64,000 bases of DNA from assembly GCA_038496445.1 (NCBI GenBank), contig JALMLS010000378.1, positions 124,001 through 188,000 of the forward strand. The letters run 5' to 3'. Positions 31,609 to 46,132 of the stretch are shown here, in pieces. The notes beneath the pieces were generated by a model. That model was not told the origin of the DNA, ran no database searches, and worked only from the letters and a program-made list of their open reading frames with translations. A program made the translations under genes and the position numbers. Source of the DNA: Trichosphaerium sp. ATCC 40318. Lineage: Eukaryota > Protista > Tubulinea. Each line of letters begins with the position of its first letter. The stretch's first letter is position 1.

Positions 31609-34347
31609 ATGGTATCCCGCGTGAAACAAGCAAAACCAACTATACAGAAACCTGCCAAAGAATACTACAGCAGAGGAATCAAAGAACTCGCAAAAAAATA
31701 TAAAGATCAATTTATTACCGAGAATATCTTTAACGCTGGCACAGATAAGTCCAGCATCGACAGCGAGAAGCTCCCTATCGTCCATATTAAACTAGGTGGA
31801 CGCACAGTAGAAGCTATGATCGATTCCGGATCCACAATCTCTGTAGTAAGCAACAGATGTGTCAACTATCTCAACAGCTACTTCAAAAAAGCAGGAAAAC
31901 CTATACTTGCAATTAATCACAGTAAGATTATTCAAGTTTCTAGTGACATACTTAACAACGTTGCTGAATATTCTTTAGGCGTCGTCAATACCGAAATAAT
32001 ACTCATGGATGTGCCAACATTTGAAACACTCCATGTGATGGAAAAACCCCAATTTGATGTTGTTCTTGGTATCAACACTCTCATCAACGCTAAAGCAGTG
32101 ATTGATTTCAGCAAAAGCGTCATTTACTCCGGTAAACATTATGGAGTCACTCCTACCGTCAACCTCACAGACATCAACATTTCTGAGCCTAAAATCGCCA
32201 ACTCGGCTGATAACTCCCTTCACGAAGATATACCCTTACCTATGGATGAATCCGAGAAGGATACAGAATCCACTATCAACACTACAGAAGGCAGTCTTCC
32301 TAACACGCCTCTGTACTCGGATGACAATCTCATCAAACAACTCACGGAAGGAGGTGACGAACCTGAGATAGATACTCGCAAAATCAACAAAGCGAACAAG
32401 CTCACGACAAACGAGATCAAAAAGATTGTCGACAAGGCTAACATCAAGAAAGAAGCCACATTCTGTTCCGAAATCACTTATAAAAAATCGGATTACAGGG
32501 AAATCGCTCTCATTTCAGACAAAAACGCTGAAGTCAAATTCACCGACCGCGAAGGAATGACTTTCAACTTTAGACTTCCTAATCTTCCTCCCTTCTCCGA
32601 AGTTACCATCACTGAAGCTCTCAGCTTTAGAAAGGAAAACGAAGTCATGGTATCAATGATTGGACTTGGATCTCATCAAACCAGCAAAAGCGTTCAATTA
32701 ACCATCTTGCATCAAGATCAAGAAAACCGCAACACCCCTATTGTCATCAAAAAGGGCAGTGTACTCGCCTACGCGTTCATTAATCGCCTTGGCAAAATCA
32801 ATAGCAATAAACCTACCTTAGTTTACTCTGAGTTAATTCCTAACATAACTCCTACTAACAAATCACTAGATTTTAATAAGTCAGTTGAATTACCAAAGTT
32901 AGTACCTGAGAAAGGAACCCCACCTCCTGTCGAGCGTTTCCTAAATAGAGCACCTAACACTTCTACTGAAACGTTAACAGAACTAAAGAATGATCCTGTG
33001 CTCAAGGACATTCAAGTTAATACTAAAGTGCTATCTAACAATCAACGTGATTATCTGGTTGATTTATTAAAAGTCAAGGGTACACGTGTATATAATGAAC
33101 CTGAAAAGTACGGTCAGGTAAAGTACGAACCAATTAAACTTAAAATAAGAGATAATGCTGTACCACACAGAGTTAAAAGAAGACGCTATGCAGCAAAATA
33201 CGAAAAACAATTACAAAAATGTGTTGATCGTCTAGTTGCACAAGGCATAGTATCTAAAGTTACCGGCTCTGACTGGGTGTCTCATGCAATGGTCCTCCGT
33301 AAGAAAACTGGCGATGATCGCTTTATTATAGACCCTGCAAAAGTAAATGAGAACACAGAATTCTACCCATATCAAATACCTGATTGTAATGAAATGCTTA
33401 ATAAATTTTCAAAATGGAAATATAAAAGCGCTCACGACCTACCTCAAGGTTTCTTCCAGTTCTTGTTAGATAAAGATAGTCGTAAATACACGGCTTTTGT
33501 CACTAAGAAAGGAGTATACGTCTTCAATGTCTTATCAATGGGTTACAAAAACTCACCTGCTGAATTCCAAGAAGCAATGAACAATATCTTTAGCAGTCTA
33601 GATCACACTGAACCATACTTTGATGATGTTGGAACGGGAGCCAATACAGTGGATCAAATGCTAAAACATTTAGAAGAATTCTACGATGTATGCATCAAAT
33701 ACAATGTAAGAATGTCCCCTCGTAAGACAGTACTATTTGCTACAGAAATGAACCACTTAGGACACACGCTAGTGGGTAAAGCAATGGTTCCTAGTGAAAG
33801 TAAAATTAGTAAACTACTATCAGTTGCAAAACCTACAGGGAAAAAGCAACTTAGCTCCATAATACATCTAGCAGGTTACTATCGTAAGTTTGTAAAGGAC
33901 TTCGCTGGGATAACTCAACCGCTTACAAAATTACTCAAGGATGATGTTCCCTTTGAGTGGAAGGATGAAGTTCAAGGAAAAGCGTGGAATACTTTACTAA
34001 ATAAACTTACTTCATACCCTGTATTAGTTCCACCTGACTATTCTAAACCATTTGTATTACATACAGACGCTTCTAAACATTCTATAGGCGCTGTACTAGA
34101 ACAAGAACATAATGGTGAACTCCACGTTGTTGAATACTTTTCTAAGAAATTAAAACCTGAAAGAGTTAAGAAATGGGAAATTTGGAAAAAGGAATGTTGG
34201 GCTATTGTAGCAGCAGTAACGAAATTCCGTCACTACCTACTCCCCAACAAATTTACTATAGTAACGGATCATAAAGCGTTACTCTATCTCAAGAATTTCC
34301 ATGACCCTACTCCTATACTAATGAGGTGGGTCATGAAACTGTCAGAA
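31609..34347 (+). CDS. pol: Pol N-terminal part: aspartic protease, reverse transcriptase, RNase H (interrupted by insertion at 34348)
   Basis: AMIDSGS protease; DLPQGFFQ, MGYKNSP, YFDD RT; LHTDAS, KECWAIV, TDHKAL RNase H. Confidence 0.92.
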
Positions 34348-35260
34348 CAGGGGTAAAAATATTCTCAGCAAATAAATAGCATTTGCCAGCAAAATTTACT
34401 GGCAAATCATAAGATTTTGCTGGCAAAAAAATCCATTAAATTCAGGGTTTTTGCTGGTTTTTTTGGCAAACATTACTTGCAAATATCATCATTTGCCAGC
34501 AAATATCCATGGTATTTGCTGAAAATTCACAGTAAAAAAAACACATTGTCAATAAAACCAGTCAGGAGTTTCAATCAATGCACAAGGTATTTTATTTAAA
34601 TCACATGCACAAATACAAAATCACATTATAATGTACATAGAGTGTTTTTCTGTTGGGTGATTGGAATATTTCGCCATATGATTCTATACCATGTACCCCC
34701 CTGTAAAATGGTGCTGCGCATCTAATGCAAGTGGTTTCATCAAAATCCGTGTATTACTAAGAGCTACAGAAGTATGTAAATATAATCGCTCGAATAAATA
34801 AATAAATACTTACACATACCTCCGGACGCCTGCGGAAGGCAGGTACTTCCGTAATACTTTTGTTGGTAATGTAAATTGGTCTTGCGGTCACAGGGAGCTT
34901 GGTTTGGTTAAATTCCGTCAATTACTAAGAACGCTACATACCATTTAATAGTGATCATCCAAAATCGTTTTGAGCTCACATTGAAAAAGTATGTCAAGTC
35001 AATGAGTTTTTTCTTGGGAATATTATAGCTGGTGTTTTTTGGCCAACTCAGCAAAACCATGGCATTTGCCAGCAAATGGCAAATATCTGGATTTGCTGGC
35101 AAATGACAGTTTTTGTTAATTTGCACAATGGCAAAACCATGGCATTTGCCAACAAACAGCAAATATCAAGATTTGCCATCAAATGACAGTTTTTGCCATT
35201 TCAATAAAAATGGCAAATATCAAAATTTGCCAGCAATTGCCATAGATATTTTTACCCCTG
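34348..35260. mobile_element. Non-autonomous TIR DNA transposon (MITE-like, 913 bp) nested in pol
   Basis: Perfect 15-bp TIR CAGGGGTAAAAATAT...ATATTTTTACCCCTG, flanked by AA/AA, with many subterminal ATTTGCCAGCAAA repeats. Removal restores LSE-YDFDIQYRKGK...ADALSR. Confidence 0.92.
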
Positions 35261-37308
35261 AATATGACTTCGATATACAGTATCGCAAAGGCAAATCACA
35301 TGCCAATGCTGACGCTCTCTCTAGATTAGAATTCGAAGGAGATCATGAACTAGATGAAGAATTAGAAGAACTTCTAGATCCACAAGACCTTGAAAAAGCC
35401 AATCTATCCTTCAATATAAAAGACGCTAAAGGAAATGTAGTATATAAAGTAAATAACACGTCAACTACATCAATATCTCCGTTTGTACCTGAATTGAATC
35501 AGCGAAAAATAAATATTAGTAACCTCCTGACCTGATTTATTTCCTTAATTGCTGAGCTCGAAACTAGTACACTAACACAACCTAAACTTACTCGCAATGG
35601 TACATTTGCACTTGACTCAGATGGTGTACTTAATAATTTTACAGTACCACCAGGTCATGTCAAAGCAAACGGCATATTTAGAATTGTCGTCCCGGACTGT
35701 CTAAAAATAGATGTGCTAAGGCACTTCCATGACTCACCACTTAGTGCACATGTAGGAGTAAACAAAATGTATAACAATATTAGAAGCCGTTTTTATTGGA
35801 AGAATATGTTAGCGGATATTCAAAATTATACATCTAAATGTGACATCTGTCAAAAGCGTAAATTTCGGTCTAAAACAACTAAAGACGGACACATGATACC
35901 AATAACAGCTCATCCTTGGGACGTTATAGCTGTTGATATATCAGGTCCATTTCCAACGTCCTACAAAGGAAATTCGTACATCCTTTCAATATCTGATTTG
36001 CTATCTAAATGGCATGAATTCGTACCTATGAGCTCTACAACTTCAGACTTAGTTGCTGATGCTATATGTGAGCATATCATTACTAAGTTTGGCGCTTTCA
36101 GAGCCATAATCAGTGACAATGGCTCCAATTTTAGAAGTGAAATTATAAGTAAAATATGTGAAACAATGAAAATCGAAAATCGATTTATTTCACCTTACAA
36201 TCCTCAGTGTAACGGGCAAGCTGAAAGATCCTTTGGAACCGCTGTACCGTTATTAAGAGCTTTAACTGTAAAAGACCCACATGACTGGGATAATAAATTA
36301 CCCTTCTTACAGTTCGCCTTTAATAGTACAATTAACCGTACTACAGGAGTAAGTCCACATTTCGCATTATTTGGAAGGGAGCCTAGACTTGACCAAGTGT
36401 ACGCTACCAACATTCCAACAGATCACGTGGATGCAGCTACATACACTGCGAATATGGTTAAAACAATTGCTGATACACAAGAGCTTGTTCGCCAACACAC
36501 TAAAAAGCGACAAGCTGAGTATCAAAGGTACAAGGACAGAAATGTGCCTGACAAAATTGAAACCTTTACAATCGGTCAACAAGTACTCGTTTGGAAAGAA
36601 CTCCAAGGCGAAGGACCGAAAAAGTTAAAGAATAAAAGACATGGTCCGTACACCGTTACAGGAATAATTGGTCCTAAAACGTACAAATTAAGACACAATG
36701 TCAAAGGTCACACTGAAAGTGTTGACATGAAACGAATCATTGAGTACAAATCACATGACTCAATTGATCAAATAAATGAAGACACGCGAAGAGCGGTCTC
36801 AAAACTCCTCAAAGATCTTCCTCACGCCAAGTATCACTTGCGCGATGATGAACCATATGATCGAATCTACCACGCTGAAAACGTGGATCAACCTATGGAA
36901 GTACCAGAGCTTATAGATGACGAACCTGACACCGACTCAGAATCAGTCACTACCACAGTCTCTCCTCCATCCTCACTACCTCCTCCTCCTGAAGATACTG
37001 CTTCTCATGATGAACAAACCGTCGAATACACTCCGTTAATGCAAACATTCAAAGAACTTATTGTGAATGCAAGGAAGAAAATCACGAAAACAAAAACCAA
37101 AGTTTTGCACAGCTCTTTCAGAACGAACCTCAGAAACATGGTTGAACCTGGTGCTGGTTTTATTAAAAAAGAAAATGCGTCAGAATTCAAACGCGAAATT
37201 ACAAAGACGAAAACGAAAACCCAAGCGCTCACATTGCTGGATGAATGGATCAACAACTTCGATGTCGTGTTCGCACATGAAATACAGAAGCCGAGACGCT
37301 TCTCTTGA
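35261..37308 (+). pseudogene. pol: Pol C-terminal part: end of RNase H and integrase (in-frame TGA at 35533-35535)
   Basis: ADALSR; HHCC (HD...H...CDIC); DDE core VDISG, SDNG, GQAER; GPY motif; same frame either side of the TGA. Confidence 0.88.
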
Positions 37309-37464: not shown

Positions 37465-39102
37465 CCTTGGTACACTGTTCTGTGGAATTTGCACTTTTGC
37501 AACGTATCGAATGATCTCGCCTACCTACGTTTCGCGGCAGATGTCCAAAATCTCCGATAAAATCCATGGATTAAAGGTCATCTGCCACGAAATTCATGGG
37601 CTATTGTTCTAAAAATCTATCTTTGTATGTTCACTGAACTTTTTTTGGTGTGACATGGTGACAAAGAGAAGCAAACAAAACAATAATTTTTGAGACAAAG
37701 TTGCGATGCGTTTAAGCGATTGTTTGATTTACCAGTTTGACTTTATGAATAGTTTGTACTATCGCCAAAGCCATCTTAGATACATTTACAAACAACGCTG
37801 TGGCAGCAAGGAGTTTTAGGACCATATAAAAATCAGTTAAATTTCTATTTCATCGATTTTATTGGTTTTCATTGTTTGGTTCAATCCCACAATTCTTTGT
37901 TGGAAATACGCCATGTTCAAAACTGAAATTATACTTAAAAGTAATCTCGTTCGATTATGGCTCAAGCATATAGCTAGCCAACCCATTGCGCACCAGTCGA
38001 AGATTCACTGGTCGCATGGGTTATCACCCCATTTCTCAAATCACTCCAGCCGCAGCCATTGCACCAATTAAGCGAGGGGATTATCCGAGCAGCAATGCAT
38101 ATAATTTAGTATCATGGCACCGAGTTACTTCTTTTTTTGTATCAACACGCGATCCTTGTCAAAACGGGCAAGGGGCTGGCTTAAAAACCAGTCAAACTGT
38201 AAAGAAAAAAACTACTTGCTAAACTGGACAGTGATCTTCGTAGCGCATAAAATGTTTACATTGCGTGACTGCTAGTCACTAAAACTGAGAACCGTGTGCA
38301 CTCCTTTGTTAACATCTCGGAACGGTAATCCGTGAGACCGAAGCTCAACTCTGAACTCATAGATTAGGACCGTTTCTTTTCCGACCATTACATGCTAATG
38401 TTACACAGCTTGTTGTGCTTTTAAACCGTTCACATGGAAAAAGTTCAATGTAGGAATTAGCATTGCATTGAGTAATAGATAAAAGAGCCACTAATGCGAG
38501 CTGAAGCGTGCAAGGGTTGCAGGCAATAAATAGAAATGTTGATTGTAAACAGTATTTGCAGTGTTTCGTTCTTGACCGGAGAAACAAAATCTCCCTATTC
38601 GTGTTTTGCACAAGAACCAACACACAGTAAACTATACATTTTAGAGCCAAAATATTGAATTCAAAAAAAGGACGTTAGGGGTTGCAATTCAATGGTTTTT
38701 TTTTTTTGGTTTTTTCTCGAAATTGTTTTGCATGTTAGCAGCTTGATAGGACACTTTGTTTGTTTGTTGTTTAGATAAAGTATGTAATTCCACAATTTAG
38801 CTTAATAAGGCTAAATCAGCTGAAACTATTTCTAGATTCATCAACCTGAGGTCTACATACCATGCCATATACTCTCTACGCGATAAAATTCGTTTTAAGC
38901 GCTTTTCCCTTTCCCTCCTCTTTAGTATACTTAGTTTGTTTTTATCTTTCTCGAAACAAGTTGTGATGCCTTTAGATTAGTGCTGACACTGTTTTTATAT
39001 TATTTTATTGTTCGACAAAAAACGGCAAGGGCAAACAAGGAATTTCTTTCGGACGTTTTTTCTTCCGTTAGAAGACTCAATATTACCAATAGATAGTACC
39101 CA

Positions 39103-42100
39103 ATGGCATCTCACTCGTCGTCCCTTGCTTCGGGTTTGTCTTCTGGGTCACGCATATCAAATGCGAGTAAGAGCTCTGAATCAGGCTACAGGTTTATATT
39201 ACCGTTTTTGATAACCTTGTGCGTGACAATATCGTAGGACGGGTTTCTTAATAAAAAGAACAAATACCGAAATAAGTTCCAACAACTGTGGTTTGAACTA
39301 GATGAAGTGGCTGAACAGGTATACAGGCCATCTATAACGACTTTAAATAAATTAACGGCAAATAAATAGGTTACATACTATACAGCTGATCCCAGCCTTG
39401 GAGCAATGAAGTGTAGAACAAAAGGTAGTATAAACTTAGAAAAAGCAGAAATTACATACAAATGCACTTCAATGCCGAAAATTGAAATAAAAACAAAGGT
39501 ATGAGCGTTAACGAGAGTTTGGGAACGCTTTTGTAAAACACAAAAAAATCTTCACCTAACTTTATGCAAATTGCCTCCCTGCTCTTGACTAATCTTTGTA
39601 ACTCATAGAAAGGAAGAAAATATGTGTTACAAGGTGAAACACCAGGTATGGAACGTTTTTTCATTCAAAACTAAATTGCTTCTTCACAAATCGACTTTAC
39701 GCGCTTTTTTGTGCGTAGTGGCCAGTGTTTATTTGCTGATTATTATTTTTAAAATAGATAAAATGAAGTTGTGGCTTCAGGATTTTGTAGCAGTTCGTGA
39801 TTTTGCTAGTTCTGCGTTAGAAATGAAGGATAAATGGAAAGATGCACCTGAAGAGTGTCAAGCTTGTTTGGTGGGAAGTGACAGTGACCAAGAAGAGGAA
39901 GAAGAAGAAGATATTGAAATGGCTAGTATTGATAATGAAGAGCGTAAGCGTCATTGAATACTTGTTGTTAAACCTGTTTCAATTATTGGCGAAAACTCAT
40001 TTTCGAGTAGTTTGGAAAGTACCTATAGTAGACTTGGAGCAAAATACGCGTAACTTTGGTGATGTTATATCAGAAAACTTGACCATGGTTGTATTTTTGA
40101 GACACTTTGGATGGTGCGTAGCAGGATCCCCCAAAGCCATGTTATTCACTCTTTTTTTTTTGTTTAGTATGCTGTGTAGACGTGCCTGTGGTCGTGTTTT
40201 AAAAAGCCGTAAAGTGCTTGAAGAGATGGGTATTACTGTAATTGCTATAGGCCATGGTTCACCTGAGAGTGCAAAGAATTTTAAAAAGGAACAAATGTTT
40301 CCTGGTACGCTTATTTTCAACGCTGGAGGAATTTCTTTATGTGCTTACATGACGTGTAAATAGGTAACATCTACGTGGATCAACAAAAAACCTTGTACAA
40401 AACGTTTAACCTCAGGAGAGGATTAAAGTACTGTGTATCACTAAAGACACTTAAAGCAGCAAAACGAGCGTTTGCTGAAGGTTATCGGCAAGGAAGAACT
40501 CAAGGTGATGATAAGTACGTTGGTTTAGTAGTACAGGTTGTTGAGCTTAATAATAACGTGTTTATAGGCAACTTGGCGGTACAATTATTCTTTCAAAGGA
40601 ACGAGGCATTGTTTTCCAGCATATTGAACGCTATGCTGGTGAAGCAATGGATTATGAGAAGCTCTTGGAATCCGTAGTTAAGTTTGCTGAAGACCACCCT
40701 ATTGACGTGTGGACAAGCGCGTCATTACCCAAAGACTGGAAGAACGTTGTATGTGTCTTATTTACTCATTTTGTGTCTTTTTTCCAAAAAATCTAAATGA
40801 ATTGTAGCTATCTAGGATTAAGACCCGTATGCTTACCCCTTCGACCTCTCTTGTTTATGAAATTGGTCGTAATAATGTGATATATGCTGCTCCACAACAT
40901 ATGCCTCTTATTGATGATATACTGTTCTACAACGCTTACTTCTTTAAAGATAGTACGTAACTTTTTGGTTTTTTTTGTGGTTTGGTTTGTTTTTACCTTA
41001 CTGACATTTATTTCAACAGTCAACGCTAGTATTTGGATTAATACTGGCGCAAATGCTGCAGATAATCCTGCAGTTGTTTGTTTGAAGAAAAATGATGTTC
41101 AAGGCGTTCGTAGAGGATTATTCTTCTCAGTTGAAGTAAGTTTTTTACTTCCTTTTTTTTTTTTCGTATTTAATTCTTGTAACTTCCTTCCCTTATTAAT
41201 ATTTTAATGTAGGGTATATATCGTAGAGTTGTACCTGCACGTATAACATCAATGAAAGAGAAACTTAAATTTATTGTACGAGCTGATGATGACACTGACG
41301 AAGAACTGGATAAATACAATTTCGTCAGGGTACAAATATCCACAAAAAACTAAGAACAAATTAATGACTCTATTTTTAGATCAGAAATCCGTCTATTTAT
41401 AATGAACTCCTCACCCTTGAGTCTAAGATTGCTCATAAAAGAAACTACTCTATTGGTGTTCTATATGCAGCCAATGGTCAGCTGACTGAAGATTTATGGT
41501 ATAGAAATGGTACAACAAAAAACCTTTTGTTTTACCCTGTTAAACTCTAGTATTGATGCCTTTTATAGTGAACCATTCTCCTCGGTTTGAAGAGTTTTTA
41601 TGTTTCTTGGGTAGAAGAATATCTCTTCGTGGACACACAAAGTATTCTGGAGGTCTAGATACAAAGAGTATGTCATTTGCATACTTTTTGTTTTTTTTTT
41701 GGACTTTGTTTTATTTATTTATGCTTAGCCGATTGTAATGGTAAACAAACAGTTTATGCAAGTTTGAAGGATGTCCAAGTAGTATTTCACGTTTCTACGC
41801 TCATCCCTGATCATCCTACTGATCCATCAAGGTATTTTTGTTATATTCTTTACACAAAGTCTTTTATATGTTGCCTTAACTGTTAACTTCAGGAAACGGT
41901 TCATTGGTAATGATGCAGTTGTTATTATTTTCAGAGATAATATTTCTGAGCCATTAAACTTATCTTTGATACATTCACAAGTAAATCGTGCGTTTAAAAG
42001 ATAAAAACGAAATACTTGGTTTTTTAAACGATTTTTTTTAGAAGTATTTGTTGTTGTTAGTAAGGAGCTTGGCCCTGATAAGACAACTCAATATCGAGTT

Positions 42101-42872
42101 GAAATTGCCCATAAGAGGCCTATAACACCTTACCCACCATTCTTACCACACCCTGCTCTTCTAGAAAACACACCAGCGCATCGATTGTTGTTCTTATCCA
42201 AATGTAATTTTTTTACAGTTTTTTTCTTGATATTAACTAATGCTCTCTTATTAGTAATAAATGCTGAGCGTACAGCAATAAATACAGTACCTCTTCTAAG
42301 AAAGAGACTTGAGAACTACAGAAAACAATCATTAACAGCGCTAACAAAGAAATACAAGGTAGTCCACTTACGCATTTTTAGGCTTTTTTTGAACTAACGT
42401 TCTTGAAACCTTAGAAAAAGTCTGCACGTGCTCAACTCAAAATACCATCTCCACGAGCTCCAACGGCGAAAGGAAACACTGCCGGGAATCCACCTGTAAG
42501 AGCACAGTCAGCTAGAGGCCATCCTAGGCCAACTAGACAAATGTCCATGCTTATGCAAGAAAAAGAATTCTTGCGAAGATTGAAGGGTAACAAGAATGGT
42601 CGTACTGCTATAACTGTGAGAGGTTCTCCTAAGCAAGAACGTATAGTCAAAGACAAGGATAGACGAAAGACAATAAGTTTAGGCGGTTTTCAGCCTCCTA
42701 AAGTACGTCATGATTTATTTTTGTTTTGTTTCCGTTTCTTATTTTTTTCCTTCTTTTTCTTACTGATTAGACAAAGCGCGCCATGTCTACTTCTATGCTT
42801 CCTGTTCAAAAGAAGAAACAACAAAACAATGATGCGTTTATAAGAAACTTTGCTTCGAAGGTTCACAAGTAG
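39103..42872 (+). CDS. PH + peroxiredoxin-like 2 (AhpC/TSA_2, CxxC) + Rap-GAP fusion protein, multi-exon
   Basis: PH-like GFL.K...FQQLWFEL...MKLWLQ; VVFLRHFGCMLCR, YVD...LYKTFNL, QG...QLGG; RapGAP IGVLY, FEEFL.FLG.RI.L.GH..YSGGLD, VFHVSTL, RKRFIGND, INAE. The domain-linking exon junctions checked are in phase. Confidence 0.85.
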
Positions 42873-43174
42873 AGCCAAAAAAAATAGCCAATTGGTTTTG
42901 GCGATTTTCCTCCTTCCACTCTAATAAAAATTGTACAGTAAATTATTGAATGCTTGTGTAAGTAATTAGTGGGTGTCTGCATCTGTAACGCTTGGTCTAG
43001 AGTTGCTGCGATTGCTTTGTTAGGCTTGCATTTGGTCTTATGATGTATAATGCCGAACTACAAGAAGAATCAGCATCTTTAGGTGACAACTTGTGAATTT
43101 GTTTGGCTTAATTGTGTAGTGTTAAGTACTGTTGAAAGTTTTTCGCGCTTACAGTAAGAGCAAGTTCGATTCAA

Positions 43175-46132
43175 ATGCCCCCAAAGAAAAAGAAGAAGAT
43201 TGTAAAGAATCCTTGCGAAGGTACGAGATATTTAACGCTTGTTCGTGGAATATTTCTACTAACTTACCTCACAGGCATGGTTTTCTGTCTTAGTGGGTCT
43301 CTTTCTGCTTCTAGGACCGTTATAACGAATAAAATCGTTGCCAATGGTGGTACGCCTTGAAAAACCTTTAAGCTGCTCTTTTGAGCGATTAAAATGTGTT
43401 GGTTGTATTAATATCTTTTTTAAAAGGTGTTGTAAAGAAAACAGTTACAAACGCTGTAGAAATATTAGTAACGACGCCAAACGAAATTTCTGATAGTACA
43501 AGCAAGGTTAATAAGGCTAAGATGTTGTCAATTCCACTTGTAAGCGAAGATTACCTCGACGCTTTATTTGCAGGAAAAAAAGCCAAACCAGACGACTACC
43601 TACTATCTGATGATATGGACGTAGGTGATGATGATGAAGACGAATCAGAAGAAGAACACGTGCCTAAACCGAAGAAAAAGGTCGTTAAAATCGCCAAGAA
43701 AAAACCTGCACCAAAAAAAGTTGTTGCAAAAAAAACTGCGCCTGTGAAGCAGAGGGGTATCAAAAGAAAGGCTGATGGGACGCGTACGTATTACTACATA
43801 CTTTATAGTACTTTAGAGTATTATTAAGCTCATATGTGCGCGTTTAGTTGATGCGAACAGACTCTTTAAAAAACTAAAACCTGATGAATGTTCGAAACCA
43901 CCTAAAGTAAAGACTTTTACTGTTGGTAAAGCTGGAGAACCTTCTTTTACTTCAGACTATATTATAGAGGAAAATATTGTATTACAACTTACTGATATTG
44001 GTAATAACAATAATAAGTATTATGCACTTGAGCTACACAGTGGAGGTAGGGTTTCATTTTCGAATAAAATATTTTATCATTTTCTAACTTTTTTCGTAAT
44101 TCAGACGGTTCTTATCGTGTATTTACTCATTATGGGCGTACTGGAGATCTTGATACAAATCCTAATGCTGGTGTTCGACAAACAAGATACTATGATGACT
44201 TGGAAGGTTAACATTTGTGATTTTTTTGGAACTATTTTACCTTTTTTCGTTGACACTTTCTCATATTTTTCAGATGCCCAAGCTGGTTTCTATGGAATAT
44301 TTAAAAGTAAAACGGCCAAGAGTAAGGGATACAAACCAGTAAATCTAGCTTCTAGCAAGATTGGAAGCTTAAAGGTGGAGATTTTTCTTTCTTAATCGTT
44401 AGGTTGCTTAACCCTATTATAGGCACGTGGGCAATCAACAACAAGCTCAGGAACAGGTAAAGTCAGAAAAGTAACAATTAAGACGAAACCTTCCACATTG
44501 GACCCACCTGTATGTACAAACAGACAGTTGTTTTTTAATGCTTCAAAAAGGAATTGCGCTGACTTAGTACCTTTTCCTTTAGGTTCAAGCTTTGATAAAG
44601 AATTTATACGATGCTTCTGTTAGCTCACTTGTTGGTTCTGTGTCTGTTCAGATTACTGAAGATGGTATAACATCGTGAGTACCAATACTGTTACATAGAA
44701 AATAGTGTTAAAGAAATTTCTTTTAGGTCACTTGGTGTACTTAGCTTGGACCAAGTTGAAGAAGGAGAGTCCATATTAGACGAGATATATCAAGAAATTA
44801 AGGTGATAGATTATTATATTTTTCATGGAAGTCATTGTTAACAAGTGTTTCTTAGGGTAAAAACAGAAAGACAGTTTTGGGTAGATTATCAGGAGAGTTC
44901 TACACTGCAATACCTCATAAACTTGGACGTAGTAAAGCAGCTATAAGTGCTGCTGTAATATCAACACAAGAGACTTATAAAGACAAGAAGGAACTTCTTC
45001 AGCTCATGAGTGATATGGTCAATGTACGTGCACTGTTTTTTTTAACACTTCGTTCGTTTAAGGACGTGAGTCTAAGGCATTTCGGGTTTTAGGTTAATTC
45101 AGGAGAGCAAGGAAATATTCTATATTCTGATGACTTGGACGCCAAGTATAAGGCTCTAGGAGCAGAAATAAAACATGCACGTGCTACTTTTTTTTTTGAA
45201 GATTATTGCTGATATTCTTCTTTTTTTAGCTTAAACGTGATAGCGCTGAATGGAAGAAGGTTATGTCACATCTCCATTTAACTCAAGAGAGAGAGCTCTT
45301 AGGAGAAGAAGACGCACTTACAGAGGTAAGGACGAACCATTAGGAGATTTGAGATCCTACTTGTCGATGTAACGTTAATTGCTGTTTTTTTTCCTTTAGG
45401 GATGGGAAGACGAGTTGAATTATGAAGTCAAACAAATCTTTTCTGTTAAGCGTAAAGCAGAGAGAAAAGCATTTAATAAGAGTGTTGGTAACGAGAAATA
45501 CTTATACCATGGATCTCGTGCGAAGGTACAAAAGCAATCAAGCAAACAACAACCATGAAACTAAAGTTTTTTACCTTAGAACTTTGTTGGACTTCTGAGT
45601 CGTGGTATTCTTATGCCTCAGGCTGTGACTAAGCTAGGTATTCGTAGAACTGACTTTGGATGGCTTGGTGCTGTACGACATCATTGAATAGTTTTTTTGA
45701 CTGATGACGGCGTAACTAGGGTATCTACTATGGAGACTGTTATGAGACTTCTGAGCAGTACTGTGAGCCTGCTAACAATGGAAACAGTTATTTTTTCTTA
45801 AGTAATGTTGTACGTATTCTAGATGTTGGCTGAAAGGTTATTTTATGTTACATACTAATGATTCATCATCAAGGCACTTGGAAAGATTGCTAAACAAACA
45901 AAACAAGATGGCACAATCAAAGCACCGCCAAAAGGGTATTAAACTTATTTTTTTTTTGGTTGAAGATTTCTTTGTCTTCTCTTTCGTTGTTCTAAATTCA
46001 ATCATTAGATACGATAGTATACATGGAGATCCAGATGCTGATGGTAGTGAGTTTGATGATAACGAATTCTGTATCTATAATCCAAAGCAACATTACATCG
46101 CATACCTCATTGAGTGCGAAACAAACATGTAA
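43175..46132 (+). CDS. Poly(ADP-ribose) polymerase (BRCT-WGR-regulatory-catalytic), multi-exon
   Basis: BRCT FCLSGSL...; WGR NNNKYYALEL...HYGRTG; PARP-reg FYTAIPH; catalytic LYHGSR, GWLGAGIYY, DNEFCIY (H-Y-E triad). Confidence 0.92.

What the first reader, a model, noticed from the sequence alone, without database searches (positions are those of the whole stretch)
39103..42872. PH - peroxiredoxin-like (CxxC) - RapGAP fusion: candidate redox-switched Rap GTPase regulator
Seen: exons join in phase from a PH-like domain into a PRXL2/AhpC-TSA-type thioredoxin fold and on into a RapGAP domain. The CxxC (RHFG-C-M-L-C) forms only after removing intron 40114-40167, so it is invisible in the ORF track. 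The RapGAP keeps the Asn-thumb motif RKRFIGND. Established: PRXL2 domains are usually standalone redox proteins, and RapGAPs inactivate Rap1. Inference: this may be a membrane-recruited GAP whose activity responds to oxidation. I do not know this architecture as characterised.
Basis: partly seen in the sequence, partly recalled or inferred. Interest (0 to 1): 0.72.

Follow-up and report, generated by a model that had tools for sequence, protein, structure and literature searches.

The report
Redox-domain RapGAP fusion gene of amoebae
This is a real, spliced gene whose single protein joins a PH domain, a thiol-redox domain like human PRXL2B and a Rap-inactivating (RapGAP) domain; the arrangement is conserved in several amoebae, I found it in no paper, and it may wire oxidant signals directly to Rap signalling, which is untested.

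Summary
A 20-exon gene (about 39161-42872, + strand, 19 GT-AG introns of 50-112 nt) encodes PH, then a PRXL2/AhpC-TSA_2 domain, then a Rap1GAP-type GAP.

- **Motifs:** the LRHFG-C-M-L-C-R motif exists only after intron 40114-40167 is removed. The Asn thumb (RKRFIGND) is present.
- **Conservation:** every exon from E2 to E18 maps colinearly on a profile built from 13 natural full-length relatives. The same cassette is in a second gene of this genome (contig C33), which the scan probably also noted as s1-390872. It is also in at least 16 other proteins, among them single Trinity transcripts of four Amoebozoa.
- **Redox site:** the first Cys, which aligns with catalytic Cys44 of human PRXL2B, is present in all 20 proteins read. 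The second Cys is replaced in 6 of 19 RapGAP fusions.
- **Corrections:** The last intron is unconfirmed.
- **Limits:** redox control of the GAP is inference only. No paper I searched describes the architecture, and no NCBI or UniRef entry appeared among the relatives found.
- **Method:** I searched gene A exon by exon and never joined its exons.

Rating: new variant of a known kind, interest 0.6.

The parts
39161..42872 (+). Coding model of gene A: 20 exons, 19 GT-AG introns, 2472 nt, 823 codons
   Evidence: Exons E2-E18 are colinear with the family profile.
39161..39166 (+). Candidate start exon ATG CGA, followed by donor GTAAGA at 39167.
   Evidence: this is the only ATG with a good GT donor in phase with the acceptor at 39237. 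Paralogue B starts MSAGVNRAGFLNKK in the same place. No RNA covers this part.
39238..39840 (+). PH-like domain, in exons 39238-39318, 39370-39498, 39609-39645 and the start of 39758-39943
   Evidence: E2, E3 and E5 align to the PH part of the family profile. Pfam PH hits occur in relatives P0011, P0015, P0022, P0027 and P0064. The single exons of gene A give no Pfam PH hit.
39870..39943 (+). Acidic linker (SDSDQEEEEEEDIEMASIDNEE)
   Evidence: Translation
40011..40748 (+). PRXL2B-like thioredoxin-fold domain (AhpC-TSA_2), in exons 40011-40113, 40168-40304, 40364-40514 and 40568-40748
   Evidence: The family profile matches human PGFS/PRXL2B 9US9 at E 6e-23.
40112..40177 (+). Redox motif C-M-L-C. 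The first Cys codon is TG(40112-40113)|T(40168), split by intron 40114-40167; M L C lie at 40169-40177.
   Evidence: Paralogue B has the same intron position in the Cys codon.
40808..41509 (+). Conserved linker plus the part equivalent to the Rap1GAP dimerisation domain, in exons 40808-40952, 41020-41135, 41213-41329 and 41380-41509
   Evidence: Colinear with family profile positions 368-530, weakly for E10-E12. Relatives give Pfam Rap-GAP_dimer hits. The family profile aligns from residue 14 of 1SRQ.
41569..42358 (+). Rap_GAP catalytic domain, in exons 41569-41667, 41729-41831, 41893-41987, 42042-42203 and 42255-42358
   Evidence: Pfam Rap_GAP pieces at E 2.5e-9 to 3e-4
41909..41911 (+). Asn-thumb codon within R-K-R-F-I-G-N-D (41830-41831 plus 41893-41914)
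   Evidence: Sequence. It aligns with RKRHIGND of Rap1GAP through the family profile.
42359..42414 (+). Intron confirmed by an RNA-derived contig
   Evidence: the contig of run X1 joins 42358 to 42415 (GT..AG, skips 56).
42415..42872 (+). Basic C-terminal tail without a recognised domain. The predicted last intron 42703-42770 is not removed in the only contig; the alternative stop is at 42841-42843.

Best explanation
**Shown.** Gene A is a real, at least partly expressed, single gene. It belongs to a conserved but undescribed family found in Amoebozoa and in environmental transcripts. Members carry a PRXL2B-like thiol-redox domain directly in front of a complete Rap1GAP-type unit (dimerisation plus catalytic domain), usually behind an N-terminal PH domain. 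Gene A keeps the redox-site Arg, Gly, Cys and second Cys. It also keeps the catalytic Asn thumb of the GAP.

**Inferred.** The protein inactivates Rap-GTP. The first Cys of the PRXL2 domain reacts with a peroxide (H2O2, or a lipid hydroperoxide or endoperoxide) and is recycled by the second Cys or by an external thiol such as thioredoxin. Its oxidation state changes GAP output in cis, through conformation or dimerisation. Oxidant production at the membrane would then feed directly into Rap-controlled adhesion, motility or phagocytosis. The PH domain would place the protein at the membrane.

The confidence given is for the whole statement including the inferred redox gating. The shown part alone I put at about 0.95.
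For: - **Gene model:** exons are in phase with canonical sites.
- **Domains:** Pfam pieces are colinear. Exons E2-E18 map colinearly on a profile of 13 relatives.
- **Expression:** one spliced RNA-derived contig covers the 3' part.
- **Paralogue:** a gene on contig C33 has the same domain order and the same intron inside the Cys codon, at about 40-50% identity.
- **Relatives:** AhpC-TSA_2 plus Rap_GAP occurs in 12 of 13 long hits of an exhaustive search, and in further hits. These include single Trinity transcripts of Soliformovum, Protostelium, Cavostelium and Flabellula.
- **A mobile cassette:** it recurs with different outer domains (PH, DEP+RGS, kinase, KHA), which argues that the pair itself is the selected unit.
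- **Redox site:** the first Cys, with Arg and Gly of R-x-F-G-C, is invariant in the 13-protein alignment and present in all 20 proteins read. These residues align with Arg40, Gly43 and Cys44 of human PGFS/PRXL2B. There the thiolate of Cys44 attacks the peroxide, and the CxxC redox state changes stability and disorder (PMC12938796).
- **Sec at the same position:** the standalone PRXL2-like gene of this genome has TGA exactly where the fusions have that Cys.
- **GAP module:** the family profile matches Rap1GAP 1SRQ at E 2e-74 over residues 14-323. The model of a relative superposes on 3BRW at TM 0.85 and on PGFS 9USA at TM 0.86.
- **Substrate:** Rap-type GTPases with DTAGTEQF lie at three loci of the genome.
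Against: - There is no experimental or structural evidence that the two domains communicate. The complex prediction gave no verdict.
- Two divergent members (P0026, P0001) keep CxxC but lack the Asn thumb. The redox domain can therefore be retained without GAP catalysis.
- The second Cys is dispensable in about a third of members.
- RNA evidence for gene A covers only 42264-42826.
- The PH domain of gene A lacks the usual basic pair before the WF of strand 2. This is my reading of the sequence, and lipid binding is untested.
Confidence: 0.45

Rival explanations
1. Bifunctional tether. The PRXL2 domain is an autonomous thiol reductase, either a peroxide reductase or a PGFS-like endoperoxide reductase. 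It is merely co-localised with Rap signalling by the PH and RapGAP parts and does not regulate GAP activity.
For: The closest solved relative is an enzyme, human PGFS/PRXL2B. The active-site Arg, Gly and Cys are kept. CxxC is kept even where the Asn thumb is lost, in P0026 and P0001. The same domain is also fused to a RasGEF in P0067.
Against: The recurrent, order-conserved cassette has a conserved linker with invariant residues between the domains. That is more than co-localisation would need. No substrate is known in amoebae.
Confidence: 0.28
2. Structural or pseudo-enzyme role. The thioredoxin fold serves only as a scaffold, dimerisation surface or binding surface for the GAP, without redox chemistry.
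For: The second Cys is lost in 6 of 19 RapGAP fusions. PGFS is a homodimer whose interface involves the helix carrying the CxxC (PMC12938796).
Against: The first Cys, with its Arg and Gly, is present in every member read. It aligns with Sec in the standalone gene of this genome. A pure scaffold would not keep these residues.
Confidence: 0.12
3. Gene-model artefact. Two adjacent genes (PH-PRXL2 and RapGAP) only appear to be joined.
For: No RNA of this organism covers the PRXL2-RapGAP junction.
Against: Introns there are 59-77 nt with canonical sites, and the reading frame has no stop. The linker exons match the conserved linker of the family. Single transcripts of other species, and the paralogue, carry the same fusion.
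Confidence: 0.03

Closest known systems
Rap1GAP (human RAP1GAP catalytic fragment, PDB 1SRQ and 3BRW)
   Same: The dimerisation plus catalytic unit aligns end to end: family profile E 2e-74 over residues 14-323, and a relative's model at TM 0.85. The RKRHIGND helix with the catalytic Asn is kept as RKRFIGND in gene A.
   Different: Rap1GAP has no thioredoxin-fold or PH domain in front of this unit. The redox domain sits about 50-60 residues upstream of it, behind a conserved linker.
Human prostamide/prostaglandin F synthase (PRXL2B/FAM213B; PDB 9US9 and 9USA; PMC12938796)
   Same: It is the best solved match of the redox domain by sequence profile (E 6e-23) and by fold (TM 0.86, rmsd 2.1). L-R-x-F-G-C-x-x-C-R aligns with LRRFGCVVCR (Arg40, Gly43, Cys44, Cys47), and GDxLQxGG is also shared.
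   Different: PRXL2B is a standalone enzyme of about 200 residues. Here the domain is internal to a signalling protein, identity is about 20-25%, and the second Cys is optional across the family.
Dictyostelium multidomain RapGAPs (RapGAP1, RapGAPB, RapGAP3, RapGAP9); from my own knowledge and PMC12142906
   Same: They are amoebozoan RapGAPs with accessory targeting domains that regulate Rap in adhesion, motility and development.
   Different: I know of no thioredoxin-fold domain described in them, and I could not search the Dictyostelium proteome here.
Thiol-peroxidase redox relays (yeast Orp1/Gpx3-Yap1, Tpx1-Pap1, PRDX2-STAT3); from my own knowledge
   Same: The concept is shared: a peroxide-reactive Cys protein passes the oxidant signal to a signalling protein.
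   Different: Those are separate proteins that meet transiently. Here sensor and effector would be one polypeptide, and the sensor is PRXL2-type rather than Prx or Gpx.

Membership tests
RapGAP, Rap1GAP type (Pfam Rap_GAP PF02145) | Sequence match to the Rap_GAP catalytic domain | tested here: met
   Exons E14-E17 hit Rap_GAP positions 9-153 of 185 colinearly. E13-E18 match the family profile, and that profile matches 1SRQ at E 2e-74.
RapGAP, Rap1GAP type (Pfam Rap_GAP PF02145) | Catalytic Asn thumb in the R-K-R-H-I-G-N-D helix | tested here: met
   RKRFIGND, with Asn at 41909-41911.
RapGAP, Rap1GAP type (Pfam Rap_GAP PF02145) | Dimerisation domain N-terminal to the catalytic domain | tested here: inconclusive
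   Relatives give Pfam Rap-GAP_dimer hits just below the cut-off, and the profile aligns from residue 14 of 1SRQ. Exons E10-E12 of gene A match that part only weakly (E 0.0055 to 0.36).
RapGAP, Rap1GAP type (Pfam Rap_GAP PF02145) | A Rap substrate (Thr61-type GTPase) in the same genome | tested here: met
   Three loci encode ILDTAGTEQF.AMRD; the reversed-pattern control gave 0.
RapGAP, Rap1GAP type (Pfam Rap_GAP PF02145) | Stimulation of GTP hydrolysis on Rap | not testable with these tools
   Needs a biochemical assay.
PRXL2 / AhpC-TSA_2 (PF13911), PRXL2B-like | Sequence match to the domain | tested here: met
   E7, E8 and E9 hit positions 8-37, 40-69 and 93-113 of 114. Each exon alone is below the cut-off, as expected for pieces. 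Against the family profile they score 57-63 bits each. Relatives score 39-77 bits in Pfam.
PRXL2 / AhpC-TSA_2 (PF13911), PRXL2B-like | Active-site motif R-x-x-G-C-x-x-C (Arg40, Gly43, Cys44, Cys47 of human PRXL2B) | tested here: met
   LRHFG-C-MLC-R after splicing. The alignment of the family to 9US9 places Cys on Cys44. Paralogue B has C-A-H-T.
PRXL2 / AhpC-TSA_2 (PF13911), PRXL2B-like | Thioredoxin-like fold | tested here: inconclusive
   Met for the natural relative P0038: model pLDDT 85, with 9USA as the best match for the thioredoxin-fold domain at TM 0.86. Gene A itself was not folded, because its exons were not joined.
PRXL2 / AhpC-TSA_2 (PF13911), PRXL2B-like | Thiol-dependent reduction of a peroxide or endoperoxide | not testable with these tools
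   Needs an enzyme assay.
PH domain (PF00169) | Sequence match to PH | tested here: inconclusive
   No Pfam hit for single exons E2, E3 or E5. They do align to the N-terminal part of the family profile (E 3e-5, 4e-6 and 3e-4), which is Pfam PH in relatives.
PH domain (PF00169) | Phosphoinositide or membrane binding | not tested
   No computation here bears on it.

The most novel reading that the evidence does not exclude
The PRXL2-like domain is a portable peroxide-sensing input module. Amoebozoa have wired it repeatedly into regulators of Ras-superfamily GTPases: RapGAP here, RasGEF in P0067, and RasGAP-like proteins according to earlier scan notes. This would give a family of redox-gated GTPase switches in which sensor and effector are one polypeptide.
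Probability: 0.3. Interest if true: 0.8.

Novelty: new variant of a known kind. Interest (0 to 1): 0.6.

Why it matters
Links between oxidants and small-GTPase signalling are usually indirect, running through kinases, phosphatases or transient peroxiredoxin relays. This is a natural protein family in which a PRXL2-type thiol domain is covalently joined to a Rap1GAP unit, with the reactive Cys kept in every member read. It offers a directly testable case of hard-wired coupling between redox state and a GTPase.

The natural one-Cys and two-Cys variants, and the variants without the Asn thumb, act as built-in controls for experiments. The family also gives the poorly understood PRXL2 proteins a signalling context. 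It adds an unannotated architecture to the RapGAP repertoire of amoebae, whose motility, adhesion and phagocytosis depend on Rap.

Tried and rejected
rejected as the likely start. No GT donor lies in phase with the acceptor at 39237, and only weak GC donors would fit.
- **RNA support:** only one small run held any of the stretch. It covers 42264-42826, so the PH, PRXL2 and GAP junctions of gene A have no RNA evidence of their own.
- **Complex prediction (PRXL2 domain against GAP unit of P0038):** no verdict, score 0.00. This is not evidence either way.
- **The protein-atlas search:** no usable hit.
- **The search for homologous proteins:** full-length P0038 and alignment A1 each gave only 2 hits, because the method depends on shared words. 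The search limited to the PRXL2 region gave 7.
- **PDB search with a single exon of paralogue B:** 0 hits. The family profile was needed.
- **Literature:** searches for RapGAP with peroxiredoxin-like, AhpC, thioredoxin, PRXL2 or the Pfam names found nothing relevant. Two candidate papers do not mention such a domain.
- **Not done by rule:** the spliced protein of gene A was never assembled, searched, folded or put in a tree. All work on gene A was exon by exon, by reference.
- **Organism:** I could not name the organism, and I could not search the Dictyostelium, Acanthamoeba or Physarum reference proteomes.
Full report
**1. The observation**

The window is AT-rich eukaryotic DNA (37% G+C) with short introns. 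I read 38500-43500 and all three forward frames. I then built an exon model by hand and checked it by script.

The model has 20 exons and 19 introns of 50-112 nt, all GT-AG, most with a CTRAY-like branch site. It is 2472 coding nt, or 823 codons.

The first Cys codon is split TG|T by intron 40114-40167. The unspliced ORF reads RHFGWCVAGS, and only the spliced reading gives FLRHFG-C-M-L-C-RR. The Asn-thumb helix RKRFIGND is formed across intron 41832-41892, with the Asn at 41909-41911.

Folds and complex predictions used natural relatives.

**2. Is it more than chance?**

- Pfam on single exons gives AhpC-TSA_2 positions 8-37, 40-69 and 93-113 in E7, E8 and E9.
- It gives Rap_GAP positions 9-39, 43-72, 78-109 and 111-153 in E14-E17. 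Both sets are strictly colinear.
- A profile built from 13 natural full-length relatives (alignment A1) matches exons E2 to E18 in order, from profile position 15 to 719.
- Neighbouring exons abut within one to three positions. Scores include E7 1e-18, E8 2e-20, E9 7e-20, E14 2e-12 and E17 4e-13.
- This validates both the exon model and the single-gene reading.

**3. Corrections to the coordinates**

ATG 39103 is in the same frame as exon 2, but an in-frame TAG sits at 39235-39237. No GT donor lies in the right phase. ATG 39161 followed by donor GTAAGA at 39167 splices in phase 0 to 39238 and gives MR|DGFLNKK. Paralogue B begins MSAGVNRAGFLNKK at the same point.

At the 3' end, the only public run holding any of the stretch (X1, a small set of contigs) yields one contig. 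That contig joins 42358 to 42415, so it derives from spliced RNA and confirms one intron. It also runs straight through my last intron, 42703-42770.

That intron has good signals (GTACGT, then a pyrimidine run, then CTGATTAG), so I read the contig as intron retention. The alternative C-terminus, ending at 42841-43, cannot be excluded.

**4. Relatives in the same genome**

The assembly (G000) is 70 Mb in 642 contigs. Pfam AhpC-TSA_2 finds three places: this gene, contig C33 and contig C4.

On C33, Rap_GAP pieces lie directly downstream on the same strand. Exon-by-exon tblastn and translation show a paralogue, B, with the same order PH, PRXL2, RapGAP at about 40-65% identity per exon.

B has the same intron inside the Cys codon (TG|T) and the same AA|G intron before QLGG. 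Its motif is C-A-H-T rather than C-x-x-C. It keeps KRHIGND. An earlier first-stage note of this scan (s1-390872, another piece of this genome) describes the same architecture and is probably this paralogue. So the scan found this before on other DNA.

The C4 locus is a standalone PRXL2-like gene. Its reading frame has TGA directly after TFVRHFG, followed by a donor site. This agrees with the earlier follow-up s1-406602, which read it as a selenoprotein. Sec or Cys at this one position is what a catalytic redox residue looks like.

The genome also has Rap_GAP matches at roughly 25 places (76 exon-level matches). Three loci encode Rap-type GTPases with DTAGTEQF, against 0 for the control pattern.

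**5. Relatives elsewhere**

An exhaustive phmmer search of 1.84 billion cluster representatives, using the 95-residue PRXL2 exon of paralogue B, gave 30 hits. Thirteen of these are long proteins.

Twelve of the 13 carry AhpC-TSA_2 followed by Rap_GAP. The thirteenth, P0002, is a TPR protein matched in seven short stretches, which I take as spurious. Further members came from word-based searches: P0039, P0040, P0064, P0065 and P0066.

Sources are as follows:
- EukProt Trinity transcripts of Soliformovum irregulare, Protostelium nocturnum, Cavostelium apophysatum (Evosea, Variosea) and Flabellula baltica (Tubulinea), all Amoebozoa
- one MMETSP transcript
- JGI/IMG and Logan contigs of about 3 kb

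These single transcripts are RNA-level proof of the fusion in other species. No hit carried an NCBI or UniRef source. The searches were not sensitive enough to call the architecture absent there.

The best relative of gene A is only about 37% identical (P0038). The outer domains vary:
- PH in front (P0011, P0015, P0022, P0064 and others)
- DEP plus RGS in front (P0001)
- a protein kinase behind (P0026)
- a KHA domain at the end (P0024 and P0038)

One protein joins RasGEF to the same PRXL2 subtype (P0067). The constant unit is PRXL2, a conserved linker, then the RapGAP dimerisation and catalytic domains.

**6. What is conserved**

In alignment A1 (13 proteins), Arg, Gly and Cys of L-R-H-F-G-C are invariant. 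The first Cys is present in all 20 proteins I read, including genes A and B and the RasGEF fusion.

The second Cys is present in 13 of 19 RapGAP fusions. It is replaced by:
- Ala in P0015
- Ser in P0023 and P0066
- Gly in P0012
- Thr in P0040 and gene B

The Asn thumb is kept in all members except the two most divergent ones: P0026 (IAKD, kinase fusion) and P0001 (IGEC, DEP-RGS fusion). Both of these still have CxxC.

The linker also holds invariant residues, a Trp after the redox domain and an E-x-G motif. Gene A has both: HPIDVW and VYEIGRNNV.

**7. Comparison with solved structures**

The profile of the redox part matches human prostamide/prostaglandin F synthase (PRXL2B, 9US9) at E 6e-23. 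LRhFGCvlcRq lies on LRRFGCVVCRW, so the invariant Cys corresponds to Cys44 and the Arg to Arg40.

The paper on that structure (PMC12938796) reports four things:
- a thioredoxin-like fold
- a homodimer whose interface involves the helix carrying the CxxC
- strictly conserved Arg40 and Arg41 that make the site positive
- Cys44 placed to attack the peroxide, with a CxxC disulfide whose reduction changes stability and disorder

The GAP part matches Rap1GAP 1SRQ at E 2e-74 over residues 14-323, that is, dimerisation plus catalytic domain.

An AlphaFold2 model of the natural relative P0038, residues 247-812, has pLDDT 85 and pTM 0.76. Foldseek puts 3BRW and 1SRQ first (TM 0.80-0.85). Human PGFS 9USA is the best match for the thioredoxin-fold domain (TM 0.86, rmsd 2.1), ahead of PrxQ/BCP and ResA.

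The fairly high pTM for a multidomain chain hints at a defined packing of the domains, but I have no PAE or coordinates, so I do not lean on it. A two-chain complex prediction of the redox domain against the GAP unit gave no verdict.

**8. How it most likely works**

*Shown:* one polypeptide carries an intact PRXL2B-type active site and an intact Rap1GAP-type catalytic unit. The pairing is under long-term selection, and Rap substrates are present.

*Inferred:* it is a RapGAP whose output depends on the thiol state of the first Cys. A peroxide oxidises that Cys. The second Cys, or an external thiol where it is missing, resolves it. The change in conformation or dimerisation is passed to the adjoining GAP dimerisation domain.

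The main rival is a simple tether, in which a reductase is carried to sites of Rap signalling. It is favoured by the two members that keep CxxC but lack the Asn thumb. A purely structural role is unlikely given the conservation of the Arg-Gly-Cys site.

I put about 0.45 on redox gating, 0.28 on the tether, 0.12 on a structural role and 0.03 on a model artefact.

**9. Surroundings**

- Upstream, at 31609-37308 (+), lies a Ty3/gypsy-type retroelement pol. It has a protease, RT, RNase H, and integrase H2C2 plus core.
- About 1.8 kb of non-coding DNA separates it from gene A.
- Downstream, from about 43175 (+), is a separate intron-containing gene with a BRCT domain.
- Nothing on the minus strand under gene A looks coding.

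**10. Novelty and score**

Both domains are well known. Their fusion is not described in any paper I could search and is unnamed in the source databases ("hypothetical protein", "peroxiredoxin").

I rate it a new variant of a known kind: a multidomain RapGAP with a new, conserved, probably redox-active accessory domain. Interest is 0.6. It is a clear and testable lead for redox and GTPase biology, but so far it rests on sequence evidence only.

Noticed in passing
window 31609-37308 (+): A Ty3/gypsy-type retroelement pol lies upstream of the gene. A 915-aa ORF carries an aspartyl protease, RT and RNase H, and a 531-aa ORF carries integrase H2C2 plus core. A frame break separates the two ORFs. 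I only observed this.
   Followed up: partly
window 43175-43830 (+): The next gene downstream is intron-containing and has a BRCT domain (Pfam E 3.5e-5) followed by a lysine- and acid-rich tail.
   Followed up: partly
L015 (G000:C4:538000-546000), minus strand, about 4390-4300: A standalone PRXL2-like gene has an in-frame TGA directly after TFVRHFG, exactly where the fusions have the invariant Cys, and a GTACGT donor follows.
   Followed up: partly
L014 (G000:C33:361500-370500), minus strand, about 5983-2700: Paralogue B has the same PH-PRXL2-RapGAP order and the same intron in the Cys codon, but its motif is C-A-H-T and exons E7 and E8 are fused.
   Followed up: yes
G000, many contigs: There are 76 exon-level Rap_GAP matches at roughly 25 places in a 70-Mb genome, which is a large RapGAP repertoire.
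   Followed up: no
P0067, P0026, P0001 (proteins from public collections): The same PRXL2 subtype is fused to RasGEF in P0067. PRXL2-RapGAP with a protein kinase (P0026) and DEP-RGS-PRXL2-RapGAP (P0001) both keep CxxC but have lost the Asn thumb (IAKD and IGEC).
   Followed up: partly
window 42703-42770: The only RNA-derived contig splices intron 42359-42414 but retains this predicted last intron. Reading through would give a Phe/Leu-rich tail ending at 42841-42843.
   Followed up: partly
window 39103-39237: A 44-codon ORF (MASHSSS...) overlaps the likely true start at 39161. It is probably a uORF or lies upstream of the transcription start.
   Followed up: partly
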